The notes: generated by a model from the sequence alone, not told the origin. A stretch of 64,000 nucleotides of DNA from Auanema rhodensis (GCA_964057225.1 OZ059895.1:15934001-15998000), one strand, 5' to 3'; numbered from the stretch's first letter, positions 39,868 to 47,100 are shown. Translations and numbers: made by a program.

Positions 39868-40347
39868 TCTATTCTAAAAGTAAATCATTAAACTGCATAA
39901 TAGACCAAAGGGAGAGAGAAAGTTGTAAGTATGTTGATTATGATGAATTAGTAACGATGTTTCATCGGTACGAACAACGAAATTCAGCCAACAGTTTTAT
40001 TATTTACGGTTTGGTTGCCCGGTTTTTACCCAGAATTAATGTCTTACTTACCGCATTCTGTTTGTTAGCTCTCGTTCTTCGGGTTGTGTTACTGAATTTT
40101 TTTTTCAAAATTTTAGTTTACGATGGAAATCTCTCTCTTTCGCTGTAAACAATTTTTTTTCGTTGCAAATTTATTCCTAAAAAATAAAAAAACCAATCCA
40201 CGTTCACTAGTTATTTATAGCACGTGACTTAACTATGTCGAAATGTCTATTTGACTATGCACTTGCTGCTATTTCAAAACTGCCAATTCTCCCCGAATCT
40301 GACTTATTCTTTTGTTTCTTGTTTCCCTTTTTACGAATTTTAGATCA

Positions 40348-40840
40348 ATGCAATCGATAGATAGTGTTTGTGGACTTCAGTGTTTTTTCTCGGTCGTCGT
40401 AACGGGCTTCATATGGGGAGCGACCAATCCTCTTATGAGGATCGGCTCTATTTCGTCAGTTAGACCGTGCTTTCAAGGTGTTGTTAATGCCTTTTTTCTC
40501 TGAATCATTTCTTATTTTATGTGGTCTGCGTGCTATGTTACTTGATCTTATATCTCTTATTAAATGTTGGAAGTTTTCTATTCCGTTTGGTCTAAATCAA
40601 CTAGGATCTGTATGTGCTAGTCATCAAGTTTATTATTAAAATTTATGTTCTTAGGTGCTTTTTCACGCTTTAATAGCTAAATACCCGTTATCTGTCATTG
40701 TTCCTATAACAAATGCAGTCCAGTTGATATCTGCTGCCGCTGTTGGTCACTGTGTAGGAGATTCGCTGAACTCTCGAAGTCTCATAGGACTGTTAATAAC
40801 AGCATTAGGAATTGTTTTGATGATTTTTGCGGACCTATAA
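40348..40840 (+). CDS. TMEM234-family small DMT-superfamily membrane protein
   Basis: GFIWGATNPLMRIGS, FSIPFGLNQLGSVLF, LSVIVPITNA, GLLITALGIVLM; divergent from the BRO1 gene. Confidence 0.88.
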
Positions 40841-41516
40841 TAAGAATTGTTTTTGTATTTATCTGACCGTTTCAACTACTAAATGTCGTCATTTTTGTTT
40901 GTTTTGTTAAACCCATTGGCAGCTGCCTTAATTCTCAAAGCTTCGGATATAGCTAAAACTTCCTCGTGTTATCCCGCTTCATTGTCTGTGTTAATGCATC
41001 AGAAATCTGTACTTTACAGAACATCAGGATTAAAGTTTTTGTGTACCAGCTTCACTTTCCTCAACAAGCCTCAACCATTGCTCTTTCTTTGTTGTCACGA
41101 TGTGTCTCGCGCGAACATTCCGCGTCGCGTGCGATAGCTGCACTGGCCACCAGCCGCTATCGATGGCGCCGCCCATTTGCTCTTTCCACAACCACCGCCA
41201 CCGACGCATTTTCTATTTCTTTCATTTTATTTTACTTTTGCGAACAGTTTCAGTCGGCTGTCTTACAATACGCTCTGTACATACGGTTCTCACTGTTTGC
41301 TCAAATCCGTTACTAACTGTACCTTTTCGTCGTTATTCATTTTTTGCTCTCATTTTATCGATTTTGTGTATTTATCTGAATTTATAAATTATATTATAGA
41401 CATCTCTGGTGTCTTCTTTGGTAACACTTTCTTTAACTGATTACCCGTTCTTCACGCTCCGAGGGAGAGAGCGTGTATGGACGTAGCCCTCTACTGTCCC
41501 CACTTCGCATCTAAAG

Positions 41517-41973
41517 ATTCTTTCCGAAGAATCTAGTGAACCGTCCTTACCGCCCTTAACGGGTTTCGTAAGTTTTTACTTTTGTTTTTCAAAAATATGT
41601 ATAGCCGTTTGTATAGTGCTTTCTGCTAGAGTTACCATGTTTGGTTCTTAATCTGATATCGCTCTTATCAAAAAAATTTCATTTTATATCAGGCGTTATC
41701 TGCGAAAAATTATGAGCTAATCGATCATATGGCAGGAAGGTCGAAGCTCAAATTATTTTATTTCATGTGCGCAAATATATACGTGTTTAGTTTCAATCTA
41801 ACATCCGCCAACATAATGATATTTGATCAATTATGATATAATCTGCCATTTTACAGACTGACGAGGCCTTAGGCGTTATCTTCATAACCTACGCTCAACC
41901 TCAACTTAGAGCCAGTCAAGTACAGCTTGACAAGAACGCAGAACCTCCTTGGGATCCAGATCCAGTTTTCTGA
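41517..41973 (+). promoter_or_regulatory. Spliced non-AUG uORF of the AZIN1/ODC uCC type, about 55 codons (41517-41567 joined to 41857-41973)
   Basis: ATT (A at -3)-LSEESSEPSLPPLTGF|TDEALGVIFITYAQPQLRASQVQLDKNAEPPWDPDPVF*. No AUG, in-frame TAG upstream at 41484, gtaagt donor and ttacag acceptor in phase 0. Confidence 0.85.
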
Positions 41974-42019
41974 GGTTATCATTGTATTGCTATTTTTTCA
42001 ACAATTCCTTTAGTTTCAG

Positions 42020-42253
42020 TCTCATATCTCTGCTCCCTCTCAACTTCTCTGGTTTTTAAGCCAGCGTGTTCGCGACTGTTTTTCGCGTTCACGCCTATCG
42101 TCCTTTACCATATATAGAGCAGTAACGCGCGCTAGCTCGCGCGCTGTTTCTTTCCGTGGCATAACTCCCGCACCACCCGTTCTCCCTTGCAACTGGGAAT
42201 CGCCCGAAGAAAAAGCTCGCCGTTCGGGCAACCACGACCACATCCCACCTTAA
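42020..42253 (+). promoter_or_regulatory. Second AUG-less uORF ending Pro-Pro-stop in the ODC-like 5' leader
   Basis: 77 sense codons span nearly the whole leader exon and end ESPEEKARRSGNHDHIPP*; no ATG in the exon. Confidence 0.6.
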
Positions 42254-42335
42254 TTTCTTCGAAAAGGTAGGTGTTTTTTGACCGTGTTTTGTAATTTTTG
42301 AATTGTTTTTTAGATTCTAGCTCATTGTTTGCCGC

Positions 42336-44121
42336 ATGATTGAACGTCGTCGCCTTCCTTCTTCTTCTTACCATTCTGCTGACGAGGCTTGGTCTCGTGA
42401 CTGTTTTGCAGAGCAGACTATTTCTGTACATCCTAAACAGCATGACGCCGCTCATGTTGCTCGCAAAGTTGCCTCACAACAGGTATTTTGCACGGATTCC
42501 TGATTTGGAAGTAATTCGATTATATTAGATAACTGGAGCACCTTTTTTCGTGATGGATATTCCATCTGTTGTCCAGGCCGTTGATGACTGGATGACGAAT
42601 CTGCCACGATTCGCTCCTCATTATGCTCTGAGGTGTAATGCCGATCCTGTGTTGGCTCAGCTATTAGCAGATCAGCATGTAGGATTTGAAATTGCAAACT
42701 TGTACGAACTTGAATTGGTATTGAAAAATAACCATATTTTTATTTTTTATTCTGTTGTTTAAGGCTCAACAATTGGTTGACTCTTCCAAAATAGTATTCA
42801 GCAATCCTTTATGGACTAGAAAAACTATGCGTTTGGCTGGAGAAGCCAATGTTGGCACCGTTGTTGTCAGCCGTGAAAAAGAACTCCTAGATGCCGTTTC
42901 TTATGCACCTGATTCAAAGTACTTGTTTGATTTTTTGTTGTTGTTGCTATGGTAATGCGTTTAGTATTCTTATTGCTGTTTCTCTTGGATGTCCTGTTCG
43001 TGGAGAATCTGTAGCTACAACAACGGGATGTTGTTCCGACGAAGCTGAACAGCTAATTATGACAGCTTTCGAGTTAAGAGCTAAGTTTATTGGCTTTAGG
43101 TTTGTTTTTATTCTATAAACTTAAGTTAAATGCGTACTTTTAAGTTTCAACGTTGATAATACTGATCCGTCTATCTACTACCAAGCTTTAAAAGAAGTAA
43201 GAGGCCTGTTCGATTATGCAGTTTCATGTGGCTTATCTCCAAATACTGTCGCTGTCGGAGGAGGCTTTCGCTGTCCACGTGGCGATGATAAACTTCGTTT
43301 CTTTGAGGTACACCAACAAGTCTATTTGAAGATCTTACTTATTATTTGCAGGTTTGCGATGCTTTAACTGCTGCAGTCGAGGAAATGTTTCCAATTAAAA
43401 TGTTCCCTTCACTGAATTTGTTAGCTTCACCTGGAAGATTCTTCGCAACCTCTGCATTCTCTTTATGCACCAATGTTGTTGCGAAACGACCTCTAGACAT
43501 GAGTATGCACGAAATGAAGAGTATGTGATTCATTTATCATTACATTTTAAACCTTTGTTTTTCAGATAACAACTCTATTAATAATGTTGCGTTTGTTTAT
43601 CAAACGAATGATGGGATTTATGGATCATTCAGTTGCCGTTTAGCCGATTGTGATCCAAAATGCAGACCCCTCAATGTATGAGCTTATACTTGTTTTCCTT
43701 TTTTATTGTTTGTACTTTAACAGGAGAATGATAACGATGGTTCATTTCATTTGGGAACAGTGATTGGACCCTCGCTTGAAGCCATTGACGTAGCTCAGCG
43801 TTGGTTCTGTGGTCGTCAACTATCTGTTGGGGAATGGCTGTTATGGGAAAATATGGGAGCCTATTCTATGCCACTTGATCCTGATTACGAGGCTCCACCA
43901 GTGTACTATTATACTGGTAAAGATAACTGGTTCGTTCAAACAATTCGAAAGCCTATTTTTTTTGTTTTTTTAGGGACTATATCAATGCCAAAGGACGTAG
44001 AAAACAGTCTGCCGACTATAGCACTGATTCAGAAAACTCTGACTTCTCCAGTGACGTTGAGAGCATCTCTTCAGATGAGGAGCATGATCTTATTACTCGA
44101 TTTGACAGTTTCTTCGACTGA
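42336..44121 (+). CDS. Ornithine decarboxylase paralogue, predicted catalytically inactive (antizyme-inhibitor-like)
   Basis: PFFVMD, PHYALRCN, GFEIANLYE, VGGGF, SPGRFF, NDGIYGSF, GPSLEAID, LLWENMGAYS; acidic tail; in-frame TAG at 42318 fixes the start. Confidence 0.9.
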
Positions 44122-47100
44122 ACTGAACTTTTTTTTAGTGAATAATCTGATTTTTTTCTATTTTTTCTATTTATCCACATATTCATCACATAATCCGCGT
44201 GCGTGACTTGGCTTTTGTCTTTATTCTCCTTATATCCGGGATTTTATTCATAATTGAAATTGTTGGGAGTAGCATCATATCGTTCTTGAACATTTCCTCT
44301 CATAATTTCTTTCCATTTTCCTACTCACCAACTTTCATCTGAATTATCACTTTCGTGCAAAAGTAGAGAATAGTTTACCATTTTCAAAGTCCACTGGTGA
44401 TGTAATCCAAGTGGCTCACAATAAAATATGTTGATAATCCCGTTGTTTTTTTCTGTTCAACAAAGAATCGAAAGGAATTCATTGGAAGGGAGGGTTGAAG
44501 AGAACAACTGTATTCTATGTGGATTGCCTGCCGGCTATCTTTTAAAGAAATATGGCATAAGACCACACTTAAGTGAGGAAAAACATAAATCTATATTCAT
44601 AGGATCAATATTGTCATTGTGCATGTTTTTCTATGTTTTCATCTTTGTTTAAAGCTCCCGCTCTCTCGTCCGTTCGAGGTTTTGATGAGCTGTTTCGTTC
44701 AGGTTGTTTTCTTTTCTTGTGTTCCAGTTTTCTGCGGCTTCTTATTGTCTTCAAAAGCCTGCTCTTCTAGTCTTCAACTTGCATGCCAGTGTAGCAGTCG
44801 TGTGTATCAAACTCTATAGCTCAAACTACAGACTGAAATCCCAAATTTTTGTTGATAATTATGTGAAATGATCATTTTCACATAAAAGGACAGAGAACAG
44901 AGGTGATGACGATGACGGTGCGACTTCATATAGGGAAGTATGTTCCAGAAACGGCTATGAATAGGGACGTAGGACGTAAATAGAAGGAAGGAAAACAGCA
45001 AAGACAGAATGTGTATGTATATCTCATGTGCTACTTTCTTAAACGAATAGAAAGGTTTTAGATCTCTTCATAAAGTATTTACTCCCGTTTACAAGAATTT
45101 GCTCTCATGTGTTTGTGTCCTCAGGGGATGAGGTCGCTCGCAAGACTTCAACGTTCTTCTAGTTCAATGTACATGCACTTTTAAGAAAGGACAATCCTAG
45201 CAAGCAGTTCTTGTAAATAGTTTCCAGGCGTGTAAGATGCATTGATAGTATCAACATAAGTTATTTTCAGTGGCAAGTCATAGTTCTGGGGAACTTCTAC
45301 GAGTAAACGTTCATTTTTTTGGGTGACACCCTATGTCTCTCACTATCACTCACATGCACAGCTGGTTTAATTTGAATCAATACCAAAACGTTTGTCTGGT
45401 TTCTTATGATAAAAGCTGTTGTTGCAGTGAAGGTCCCAGATCATGTAGTTCACGTCACTTGTCTGTGGAACGATGTTGCAGCACTAGCAGGGGTTAACCA
45501 ACTAGCAGATTCATATATTTATATCGACTACTTGATAGCTATAATGATTGAACTAGCTAGAATTAGCTGGCTCATAGAATTCTTGATAGTCATTGGCTCA
45601 ATAGCTTTGAGAAGATGAAAGAAGAAGCCGGATTCTTATGTTAGTATTCTTCTTCACTTCACCCTGTTCGCCAGATATAACCCTGCTTTGGATATAAACG
45701 ATTACGTGTTCATCAATAATCTTATGATTTGCTTCAAGTGATTCGGGAAAAAAGGAAAAACTTGCGATAATAATTTGGCGAACTTTGATTTATTGGCCAT
45801 CGCAGCACCTTTTGATTTATAAATCTGATAGTAGAGAGAATGCAAGAAAGAAGAATGGATGGGATGGCTAACCGAAAATCATCAGCATAGTTTCATCAGT
45901 TATTTTTAGAAAATATTGATTTGCACAAGAACAATGGGTAGACGAAGGCTTGTTAATTTCTTTCTATTGATAGTAAGTTATAGAGAGTGTATGTTGTCTT
46001 GTGTAAGAGAGGGAGAGAGAGTTTGTTGATGTACTTCATGATAGATGTTTCATTTTTTTGTGGCAAATTTAATGTGAAACACTGCTTTGACCGGTCAAAA
46101 TACCTTCCTTAATAACACGATGATGGATTCATCGTTCATTTCAACAGCCCAAATCTGAATATAGATGAGTTCGTTGAACAGTTGACATCATCTTGTATCG
46201 TCATCACTTTTGTCTCTTCAACTTTACTAAGTCACAAATCCGCTTTTAACCAAACGACTGCCAGTTGTCGTCATTTTCTATTTTCTTAGCAAAAGAAGGA
46301 TCTATATGGATTTAGATGATTGTGGTTACAGCAGCAGTTATATTTAGCTCATATATAGTAGAAGAAGGAGAAAAAATACGAAAGACTAGTATAGTTTATA
46401 TACATGTCTATTATATTTGAGCATTTAACAACTACACAGCACCTGGTGGCACGTTGTGAAATACTCGTTTTGTTAGCCATTTCCGGAATTTTTCTATAGT
46501 CTTTGAAGTTGGCTGCTGCAATGATTTTTAAAAATTGTATGAAGAATACGACAAAGGTTGTTTGGCCTTGTTGTAAACGGACAGAGACAAGGGGGGTGAG
46601 TTGTAGATAAGGAAGGGGAAAACTGATGTTAGTGATTAGCTTGATTCAACACAGCTTATGCTTTTCCATATTATCGTTCATCGACTGTTTTGCAATCATG
46701 ACTAATCCATGTGAAATGCATGTGGGCAACTTGGTTTCTTGGTATTGGTTGCTGGGTTGGCATCCATCAGAGGTGGAATGGATGGGTGTGGGAGAAGCAG
46801 TCTATACTGGTAATAACACATTTTTTTTTGAAGACACATGAGGAAAACATGTTAATTCGGGGAGCCCGAAGATGAGATGTTCTGGTAGCATCTAGATTAC
46901 TATTAAGACAAAGCACCAAACCCGATTTCATCGTTGACGACATCGACGTCGACAGCGACAACGGCGACAAAGAAGGCATTGAGAAGCACGTAGTTCTCGA
47001 GCAGATGTTTGAAATATTCTTGAAACGGGAAACGCTTAATGAGTTTATTATCTGATGCTCCAGTATCTATCCTCGTAGTTCCTCAGTGCAACTCATTATC

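What the first reader, a model, noticed from the sequence alone, without database searches (positions are those of the whole stretch)
41888..42253. Second AUG-less uORF (…HIPP*) joined to the PPW uORF by an antizyme-like +1 UUC-UGA-G junction: candidate two-stage polyamine recoding cassette
Seen: after removing intron 41975-42019 (or 41975-42013, same frame), the +1 frame relative to the PPW uORF is open for 106 codons without an AUG. It ends Pro-Pro-stop 35 nt before the main AUG, in a different frame. uORF1 ends GUU UUC UGA G, so a +1 slip at the stop enters this frame directly. Known: antizyme uses polyamine-stimulated +1 frameshifting at UCC-UGA (UUU-UGA in C. elegans), and Pro-X-stop ends such as PS* in fungal HOL1 and plant AdoMetDC uORFs cause polyamine-sensitive termination stalls. 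Inference: an elongation stall (PPW) and a termination stall (PP*) sit in tandem, reached by frameshifting or near-cognate initiation (for example ACG at 41936). I do not know of this coupling being described. No pseudoknot is evident right after the junction, so the frameshift is speculative.
Basis: partly seen in the sequence, partly recalled or inferred. Interest (0 to 1): 0.85.

Follow-up and report, generated by a model that had tools for sequence, protein, structure and literature searches.

The report
Second conserved uORF before nematode antizyme inhibitor
The open frame ending HIPP-stop is real, and its last 47 codons are a peptide-coding upstream ORF conserved across rhabditid nematodes. 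It starts on its own rather than by a +1 frameshift, and probably represses the antizyme-inhibitor gene by stalling ribosomes at its Pro-Pro-UAA end.

Summary
RNA contigs confirm intron 41975-42019. The +1 frame is open for 106 AUG-less codons (41888-42253) and ends Pro-Pro-UAA 35 nt before the main AUG.

The length alone is not significant: 15-18% of shuffled leaders give an open frame this long.

The 3' part is a real coding element. The tail P.C.W.S(P/R)EE.A(R/S)R.....H(I/R)PP-UAA-Y recurs in nine rhabditid leaders. In three independent close pairs, 40 of 67 nucleotide differences lie at codon position 3. Synonymous codon changes are 27 of 51 in this frame, against 8 of 51 and 6 of 52 in the other two frames.

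The offset from the PPW uORF is +1, +1, 0, 0, 0, +2, +2 and +2 across eight leaders. Stops interrupt the frame in six of them, including the closest relative, Auanema sp. JU1783. The codon before the UGA also varies.

The likely start is a weak AUA at 42110, in accAUA context, with a GC hairpin beginning 14 nt after it.

The best model is a non-AUG conserved-peptide uORF that stalls at termination, like cytomegalovirus UL4 uORF2 (…KYIPP-UAA). It lies downstream of the known PPW uORF (called uCC1 here).

The C. elegans counterpart is already annotated as a 38-residue, 5'-partial CDS. I found no paper describing it.

The parts
41459..41567 (+). First leader exon of the antizyme-inhibitor-like mRNA, spliced to 41857
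   Evidence: RNA contigs of runs X2 and X3 begin at 41461 and 41459 and join 41567 to 41857, skipping 289 nt with GT..AG ends.
41477..41536 (+). AUG-initiated uORF0 (19 codons) that overlaps the AUU start of the PPW uORF
   Evidence: Sequence read. The AUG and its flanks are conserved in the other rhabditid leaders.
41517..41973 (+). uCC1: the known PPW-type AUG-less uORF. Candidate AUU start at 41517, intron 41568-41856 removed, ends ...NAEPPWDPDPVF-UGA at 41971-41973
   Evidence: Frame open from 41487. The peptide ...QPQLRASQ.QLDKNAEPPWDPDP is conserved in six other rhabditid leaders, and diverged (EPPF) in Diploscapter.
41975..42019 (+). 45-nt leader intron; its donor starts one base after the uCC1 stop
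   Evidence: Joint present in all four runs. Splice sites GTTATC...TTTCAG.
41888..42253 (+).
   Evidence: The length is within chance.
42110..42253 (+). uCC2 proper: 47 codons from the candidate AUA start (accAUAu) to the UAA
   Evidence: AUA, AUU or AUC recurs 39-52 codons before the stop in all nine leaders. Between the window and JU1783, frame-breaking indels (2 nt, 1 nt) lie only upstream of accAUA; the one indel downstream is 3 nt.
42127..42144 (+). GC hairpin GCGCGC-UAGCUC-GCGCGC beginning 14 nt after the AUA
   Evidence: Folds, coordinates. The same core sequence is kept in JU1783 and, with one loop change, in Diploscapter. An analogous GC palindrome occurs in strongylids L008 and L010.
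42179..42253 (+). Conserved tail VLPCNWESPEEKARRSGNHDHIPP plus UAA-U, the putative arrest peptide
   Evidence: Codon alignment of nine species. W, one E, A, H and P-P are invariant, all four Ala codons are used, and UAA followed by U or C is invariant. Synonymous excess.
42267..42313 (+). 47-nt leader intron between the uCC2 stop and the main AUG
   Evidence: Joint in all four runs; splice sites.
42336..44121 (+). Main ORF: 473-residue ornithine-decarboxylase-like pseudoenzyme, orthologue of C. elegans 'Antizyme inhibitor 1'; nine exons
   Evidence: Exon joints, translation, stop coordinate. 84% identical to Auanema sp. JU1783 P0164 and 38% to C. elegans P0172. HYALRCN and GPSLEAID replace the usual Lys and Cys motifs.

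Best explanation
The gene at 42336-44121 is the nematode antizyme inhibitor, an ODC-like pseudoenzyme. Its spliced leader carries three upstream coding elements: a short AUG uORF, the known PPW-type AUG-less uORF (uCC1), and a second AUG-less conserved-peptide uORF (uCC2, 42110-42253).

uCC2 is not reached by frameshifting from uCC1. A small share of scanning ribosomes starts at a weak near-cognate codon, AUA in accAUAu context. The GC hairpin 14 nt downstream may help by slowing the scanning subunit over that codon. These ribosomes translate 47 codons.

The conserved nascent tail (W.SPEE.ARR.....HIPP), with Pro-Pro in the peptidyl-transferase centre and UAA followed by a pyrimidine in the A site, then slows peptide release. 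The stalled ribosome sits 35 nt before the main AUG and blocks scanning ribosomes, so less antizyme inhibitor is made. Pro-Pro bonds and termination both depend on eIF5A, and polyamines antagonise eIF5A on the AZIN1 uCC. The stall is therefore probably stronger at high polyamine levels and would add a second negative-feedback sensor after PPW.

Shown here: the splicing, the open frame, peptide-level conservation in this frame, the invariant PP-UAA-Y end, and the variable frame offset to uCC1.

Inferred: the start codon, a role for the hairpin, stalling, and polyamine dependence.
For: - Transcript structure comes from spliced RNA contigs.
- The tail is conserved in nine leaders spanning Auanema, Caenorhabditis, Diploscapter, strongylids and a Mesorhabditis-like species.
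- Over all pairs, differences by codon position are 306/287/464. Synonymous codon differences are 232 in this frame against 78 and 42 in the other frames.
- In three independent close pairs, 40 of 67 differences are at position 3. Synonymous changes are 27/51 against 8/51 and 6/52 (Fisher P = 1.3e-4 and 6.6e-6).
- The stop is always UAA and the next base is always U or C.
- Only 3n indels occur downstream of the AUA or AUU in all three close pairs.
- A near-cognate AUA, AUU or AUC recurs at -39 to -52 codons.
- A hairpin follows 14 nt downstream in the window, JU1783 and Diploscapter, and an analogous one in two strongylids.
- Frame offsets to uCC1 are 0, +1 or +2, with intervening stops in six of eight leaders.
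- Precedent: cytomegalovirus UL4 uORF2 ends ...CKYIPP with TAA (PMC4231674). It stalls at termination through its two C-terminal prolines (PMC4605324). Terminal-diproline uORFs in human mRNAs are repressive (PMC9648851).
- eIF5A acts on the AZIN1 PPW motif and in termination (PMC9788402).
- The C. elegans reference annotation carries a 38-residue, 5'-partial CDS for this uORF.
Against: - There are no ribosome-footprint, initiation-mapping, toeprint or reporter data for uCC2 in any species, so translation and stalling are inferred from conservation only.
- AUA is among the weakest near-cognate starts.
- C. elegans, L013 and L002 lack the strong hairpin. They have AUU or AUC instead, and the C. 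elegans annotators placed the CDS start at a GTG that L013 does not keep.
- The human terminal-diproline uORFs tested in PMC9648851 differed from the viral one, so PP-stop alone does not guarantee a strong stall.
- Only contigs were available, not raw reads, so the mRNA 5' end and any trans-spliced form are unknown.
Confidence: 0.65

Rival explanations
1. Ribosomes ending the PPW uORF slip +1 at UUC-UGA-G and translate the whole 106-codon frame to HIPP-stop, as in antizyme decoding.
For: In the window and in L002 the offset is +1 and the frame is open across the uCC1 stop. The gene belongs to the polyamine pathway, where +1 frameshifting at a UGA is known (PMC2811004).
Against: - The closest relative, Auanema sp. 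JU1783 (84% protein identity), has offset 0. Two frame-breaking indels and stops lie between the uORFs.
- Five further leaders have offset 0 or +2 with stops.
- The codon before the UGA is not conserved.
- UUC does not re-pair in the +1 frame (UCU), which is read directly from the sequence.
- The 70 nt after the stop show no significant structure (z = -1.1) and are poorly conserved.
- An open frame this long arises by chance in 15-18% of shuffles.
Confidence: 0.04
2. uCC2 is translated mainly by ribosomes that have finished uORF0 or uCC1 and reinitiate, or in some species read through the uCC1 UGA. The two uORFs would then be coupled by reinitiation rather than by independent leaky scanning.
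For: uCC2 always lies 222-302 nt downstream of the uCC1 stop, which leaves room to reacquire initiation factors. In Diploscapter the two are in the same frame with only the UGA between them.
Against: - Reinitiation after a uORF of about 55 codons that contains a stall site is generally inefficient, and it would still need a non-AUG start. This rests on established knowledge, not on a test here.
- Readthrough is blocked by further stops in JU1783 and L010.
Confidence: 0.12
3. The conserved peptide works in trans as a small protein, and its position in the azin leader is incidental to regulation of the main ORF.
For: The peptide sequence is under purifying selection. C. elegans annotates it as a separate CDS.
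Against: - Conservation is concentrated in the last 24 residues, about the length held in the exit tunnel.
- The stop codon identity, the base after it and the terminal Pro-Pro are invariant. These are features of cis-acting arrest peptides (PMC4605324).
- The start is non-AUG, so the yield would be low.
Confidence: 0.08
4. The conservation reflects an RNA element (structure or protein-binding site), not a peptide.
For: Exon 2 folds better than shuffles (z = -3.3), and the GC hairpin is conserved at the nucleotide level in three species.
Against: - Substitutions in the tail concentrate at codon position 3, and synonymous changes are in excess only in this frame.
- The window's tail hairpin GCCCGAA...UUCGGGC is not kept in JU1783, although the peptide is.
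Confidence: 0.03

Closest known systems
Human cytomegalovirus UL4 (gp48) uORF2 termination-arrest peptide
   Same: Both are upstream ORFs whose peptide ends Ile-Pro-Pro followed by UAA (...CKYIPP-TAA, PMC4231674). In the viral case the two C-terminal prolines and the tunnel-resident part of the peptide silence release by eRF1, and the stalled ribosome blocks scanning to the main ORF (PMC4605324, PMC9648851). uCC2 has the same invariant IPP-UAA end, and its conservation is concentrated in the last 24 residues.
   Different: The viral uORF is 22 codons and starts at AUG. uCC2 is 39-52 codons long, counted from its candidate start to the stop, and lacks an AUG. There is no sequence similarity beyond I-P-P. 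Stalling has not been shown for uCC2. A metabolite link (polyamines) is suspected here but is not a feature of the viral uORF.
uCC of antizyme inhibitor and other ODC-homologue mRNAs (Ivanov, Loughran and Atkins 2008; Ivanov et al. 2018, as summarised in PMC2811004, PMC9788402 and PMC7530721)
   Same: Both sit in the leader of an ODC homologue, lack an AUG, and have a conserved near-cognate start. Conservation is concentrated near the C terminus and includes two adjacent prolines. Repression of the main ORF is expected to be polyamine-sensitive. uCC1 of this window (...NAEPPWDPDPVF*) is a clear member.
   Different: uCC2 is a second, separate element downstream of the PPW uCC, with an unrelated peptide. 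Its prolines are the last two codons, which points to a termination stall rather than an internal PPW elongation stall. I found no description of a second uCC in the papers I could read. The two primary papers are not held in the library.
Antizyme +1 programmed ribosomal frameshift site
   Same: It is in the polyamine pathway, and a UGA stop ends an upstream ORF that, in this species, overlaps a +1 open frame.
   Different: The shift codon, the +1 offset and downstream frame continuity are not conserved. No stimulatory structure is present. The resemblance is coincidental.
C. elegans F53F10.2 (azin-1) upstream CDS isoforms in the reference annotation
   Same: These are the orthologous elements: a 76-residue TTG-started CDS (uCC1) and a 38-residue 5'-partial CDS ending ...SREELASRVSNNRHIPP* (uCC2).
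   Different: The annotation gives no function. It starts uCC2 at a GTG that Caenorhabditis L013 does not keep. The RefSeq product name of the 38-residue entry ('BRCA1, partial') is plainly uninformative.

Membership tests
   The codon before the UGA is UUC, UUC, CUC, GCC, UAC, UGC or UGC in seven leaders.
Antizyme-type +1 frameshift cassette | The downstream ORF is in the +1 frame and continuous with the shift site in all relatives | tested here: not met
   Offsets are +1, +1, 0, 0, 0, +2, +2 and +2. Stops intervene in six of eight leaders.
Antizyme-type +1 frameshift cassette | Stimulatory RNA element next to the shift site | tested here: not met
   The 70 nt after the stop fold no better than shuffles (z = -1.1). 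The first 25 nt or so are poorly conserved and contain a 2-nt indel against JU1783.
uCC-type AUG-less conserved uORF of ODC homologues | Lies in the 5' leader of an ODC-homologue mRNA | tested here: met
   RNA contigs place 42110-42253 in leader exon 2 of the ODC-like gene. Orthology to C. elegans antizyme inhibitor is shown.
uCC-type AUG-less conserved uORF of ODC homologues | No AUG; a conserved near-cognate start in a favourable context | tested here: inconclusive
   No ATG occurs in the frame. AUA, AUU or AUC recurs at -39 to -52 codons, with accAUA in four species and aaaAUUu in two Caenorhabditis. The start has not been mapped experimentally.
uCC-type AUG-less conserved uORF of ODC homologues | Amino-acid conservation concentrated near the C terminus, with adjacent prolines | tested here: met
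uCC-type AUG-less conserved uORF of ODC homologues | Polyamine-dependent repression of the main ORF | not testable with these tools
   This needs reporter assays or ribosome profiling with altered polyamine levels.
Terminal-diproline termination-arrest uORF (UL4 uORF2 type) | The peptide ends Pro-Pro directly before the stop codon | tested here: met
   Invariant in nine aligned leaders and in the partial L009 contig.
Terminal-diproline termination-arrest uORF (UL4 uORF2 type) | The effect depends on the peptide sequence, not the codons, within the tunnel-resident C-terminal part | tested here: inconclusive
   Synonymous substitutions are tolerated and replacements avoided in the last 24 codons. 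This fits the feature but is not a functional test.
Terminal-diproline termination-arrest uORF (UL4 uORF2 type) | [quoted passage not shown] | not testable with these tools
   This needs toeprinting, peptidyl-tRNA detection or footprint data.

The most novel reading that the evidence does not exclude
Rhabditid antizyme-inhibitor mRNAs carry two mechanistically different eIF5A- and polyamine-sensitive stall sensors in series. One is an elongation stall at PPW in uCC1. The other is a termination stall at IPP-UAA in uCC2. Each is fed by its own weak non-AUG start, and the uCC2 start is assisted by a downstream hairpin. Together they would give a steeper or two-threshold polyamine response than the single uCC described for vertebrate AZIN1. 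A shortened ...RPP-UAA uORF in a Tylenchina homologue (L015) hints that the termination sensor is older than Rhabditina.
Probability: 0.35. Interest if true: 0.65.

Novelty: new member of a known kind. Interest (0 to 1): 0.45.

Why it matters
Antizyme inhibitor is a control point of polyamine homeostasis. Its PPW uCC is the textbook case of metabolite-controlled start-site selection by ribosome queuing.

A second deeply conserved, AUG-less uORF in the same leader has a C terminus (IPP-UAA) that matches the best-studied eukaryotic termination-arrest peptide. This gives a natural cellular system, tractable in C. elegans, for three questions:
- whether termination stalling at Pro-Pro-stop is tuned by polyamines and eIF5A;
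- how two stall sensors in series shape the response;
- whether a hairpin-assisted AUA start is used in vivo.

It also shows that the attractive frameshift reading is wrong. That saves effort on a recoding assay that should be negative.

Tried and rejected
1. Length of the open frame as evidence. Rejected: 15-18% of dinucleotide shuffles reach 106 codons, and the minus strand of the leader has open runs of 47-69 codons.
2. +1 frameshift coupling. Rejected on frame offsets, intervening stops, the non-conserved shift codon and the lack of structure.
3. ACG at 41936 as the start. Rejected: it is conserved only as part of the uCC1 codons AAC-GCN and is out of frame with, or cut off from, uCC2 in six leaders.
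4. Rfam search of 41300-42500. Only a chance-level hit (E = 0.7) on the other strand.
5. RNA-element explanation for the tail. Rejected by the codon-position pattern.
6. Ribosome-queue geometry. Start-to-stall distances, derived from the start positions, are 114-153 nt across species with no 30-nt periodicity. Uninformative.
7. Primary uCC papers (PNAS 2008, Mol Cell 2018, JBC 2018 review). Not held, so I cannot rule out that a second nematode uCC is mentioned there. Full-text searches for azin-1, F53F10.2 and uCC with nematode terms found no description.
8. Gnathostoma locus L014. Only 272 nt lie upstream of the gene at a contig end, so it is uninformative. The Steinernema protein was not on record.
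9. Raw RNA reads.

Full report
**1. What is there**

The window is nematode DNA, about 36% G+C with introns of about 45 nt. Spliced RNA contigs from four runs of one study lie on 41459-44437 and define a 12-exon mRNA.

The leader exons are 41459-41567, 41857-41974, 42020-42266 and the start of 42314-42482. The leader introns are 289, 45 and 47 nt, all GT..AG.

The main ORF runs from the ATG at 42336 to the TGA at 44119-44121 and encodes 473 residues. The protein is ornithine-decarboxylase-like:
- It is 84% identical to a protein of Auanema sp. JU1783.
- It is 48-49% identical to proteins of the strongylids Necator, Dictyocaulus and Nippostrongylus and of Diploscapter.
- It is 38% identical to the C. 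elegans protein that NCBI and UniProt name 'Antizyme inhibitor 1'.

It reads HYALRCN and GPSLEAID where active ODCs have the PLP-binding Lys and the catalytic Cys. The motifs are read; the identity of the residues comes from my knowledge of ODC. It is therefore a pseudoenzyme of the antizyme-inhibitor type.

**2. The observation**

With intron 41975-42019 removed, the frame +1 to the PPW uORF is open from 41888 to the TAA at 42251-42253. That is 106 codons with no ATG, ending HIPP-stop 35 nt before the main AUG in another frame.

The length itself is not remarkable. The leader is C/T-rich, and 14.7% (whole-leader) to 18.2% (exon-wise) of dinucleotide-preserving shuffles contain an open frame of at least 106 codons.

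**3. Relatives**

Starting from one exon, I found the orthologue family. I then fetched leaders from transcript contigs or genomes for:
- Auanema sp. JU1783 (L001, genomic);
- an unnamed relative at 62% protein identity (L002);
- C. elegans (L003 genomic; L004 and L005 transcripts);
- another Caenorhabditis (L013);
- Diploscapter pachys (L007);
- strongylids (L008, L009, L010, L011);
- a species nearest to Mesorhabditis (L012).

All of them contain, shortly before the main AUG, an AUG-less frame ending ...P.C.W.S(P/R)EE.A(R/S)R.....H(I/R)PP-UAA.

**4. It is a coding element**

- In the ungapped last 24 codons, W, one E, A, H, P and P are invariant.
- The Ala column uses all four codons.
- The Arg columns switch between CGN and AGG.
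- The stop is always UAA and the next base is always U or C.
- Over all pairs, differences by codon position are 306/287/464. Synonymous codon differences number 232 in this frame against 78 and 42 in the two other frames.
- In three phylogenetically independent close pairs (window/JU1783, C. elegans/L013, L008/L010), 40 of 67 differences are at position 3. Synonymous changes are 27/51 against 8/51 and 6/52 (Fisher P = 1.3e-4 and 6.6e-6).

An RNA-only explanation does not fit these numbers.

**5. It is not joined to the PPW uORF by frameshifting**

| Leader | Offset of uCC2 from uCC1 | Frame open across the uCC1 stop? |
|---|---|---|
| Window | +1 | yes |
| L002 | +1 | yes |
| Auanema sp. JU1783 | 0 | no |
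| Diploscapter | 0 | no |
| L010/L011 | 0 | no |
| C. elegans | +2 | no |
| L013 | +2 | no |
| L008 | +2 | no |

The table is drawn.

Against JU1783, the segment between the uCC1 stop and 42107 carries a 2-nt and a 1-nt indel. Downstream of 42110 the only indel is 3 nt. The other two close pairs likewise show only 3n indels in the last 43-64 codons.

The codon before the UGA varies: UUC, UUC, CUC, GCC, UAC, UGC, UGC. UGA-G is constant because the intron donor begins one base after the stop in the three genomic sequences. The 70 nt after the stop fold no better than shuffles (z = -1.1).

**6. Where it starts**

All nine leaders have AUA, AUU or AUC in frame 39-52 codons before the stop:
- accAUA in the window (42110), JU1783, L008 and L010;
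- AUA in Diploscapter and L012;
- AUC/AUU in L002;
- aaaAUUu in both Caenorhabditis species.

In the window, JU1783 and Diploscapter, a GC hairpin (GCGCGC-UAGCUC-GCGCGC, 42127-42144 in the window) begins 14 nt after the AUA. Strongylids have an analogous GC palindrome a few bases further on.

A hairpin about 14 nt downstream is known to favour recognition of weak starts (Kozak 1990, cited from memory). I take AUA 42110 as the most likely start, but it has not been mapped. Exon 2 as a whole folds better than shuffles (z = -3.3).

**7. Mechanism proposed**

The C terminus IPP-UAA matches that of cytomegalovirus UL4 uORF2 (...CKYIPP with TAA, PMC4231674). In that uORF the two terminal prolines and the tunnel-resident peptide silence eRF1-mediated release, and the stalled ribosome blocks scanning (PMC4605324). 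Terminal-diproline uORFs of human mRNAs are also repressive (PMC9648851).

eIF5A relieves the PPW stall of the AZIN1 uCC and also promotes termination (PMC9788402). [quoted passage not shown]

I therefore propose that uCC2 is an independently initiated termination-arrest uORF that blocks access to the AUG 35 nt downstream. It is probably more effective at high polyamine levels and acts in series with uCC1. Translation, stalling and polyamine dependence are inferences.

**8. What is known**

uCC1 is a member of the published uCC family (PMC2811004).

For uCC2, the C. elegans reference annotation already holds upstream CDSs of F53F10.2:
- 76 residues, TTG start, corresponding to uCC1;
- 22 residues, TTG start inside the PPW codons (NP_001380232.1);
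- a 38-residue, 5'-partial CDS ending HIPP (NP_001368679.1).

These are shown.

Two recent C. elegans papers treat azin-1/F53F10.2 as the AZIN1 homologue. Neither passage I could read mentions a second uORF (PMC13222480; PMC13578949). Full-text searches found no description. The primary uCC papers are not held, so prior mention there cannot be excluded.

I file the window's element as a new member of a known kind.

**9. Verdict**

- The frameshift interpretation is refuted.
- The idea of a PP-stop stall uORF downstream of PPW is supported by strong comparative evidence but is functionally untested.

Noticed in passing
window 41477-41536: A 19-codon AUG uORF (MDVALYCPHFASKDSFRRI*) in the first leader exon overlaps the candidate AUU start (41517) of the PPW uORF. 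The AUG and the flanking GGGAGAGAG(C/T)GTG(T/C)ATGGA are conserved in all rhabditid leaders examined, so this may be a third regulatory layer.
   Followed up: partly
window 41971-41976; L001 2638-2643; L003 about 1722-1727: The intron donor begins exactly one base after the UGA of the PPW uORF in the window, Auanema JU1783 and C. elegans. This explains the invariant UGA-G context.
   Followed up: partly
L015 1-190: A transcript of a Tylenchina ODC-like pseudoenzyme (nearest named relatives Ditylenchus and Aphelenchoides) has an AUG-less frame ending ...AWIRRLKRPP-UAA-U, 108 nt before its AUG. It may be a shortened relative of uCC2 outside Rhabditina. The contig is truncated at its 5' end.
   Followed up: partly
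L012 1-300: In the Mesorhabditis-like species the tail ends HRPP-UAA instead of HIPP-UAA. The Ile is therefore not strictly required.
   Followed up: no
L003 1700-2132: C. elegans annotates a 22-residue spliced uORF that starts at a TTG inside the PPW codons (NP_001380232.1). The RefSeq product name of the 38-residue uCC2 entry is 'BRCA1, partial', evidently a naming artefact.
   Followed up: partly
window 40312-40840: ORF pieces on the + strand upstream of the gene (for example GFIWGATNPLMR) resemble TMEM234 (PF10639). That family is fused to the antizyme-inhibitor gene model in two Caenorhabditis annotations (P0139, P0169), so gene order appears to be conserved.
   Followed up: no
window 42619-42639 and about 43760-43785: The main protein has Arg in place of the PLP-binding Lys (HYALRCN) and Leu in place of the catalytic Cys (GPSLEAID). 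C. elegans has Ala at the Lys position (NYAVACN). Loss of catalysis is therefore shared, but by different substitutions.
   Followed up: partly
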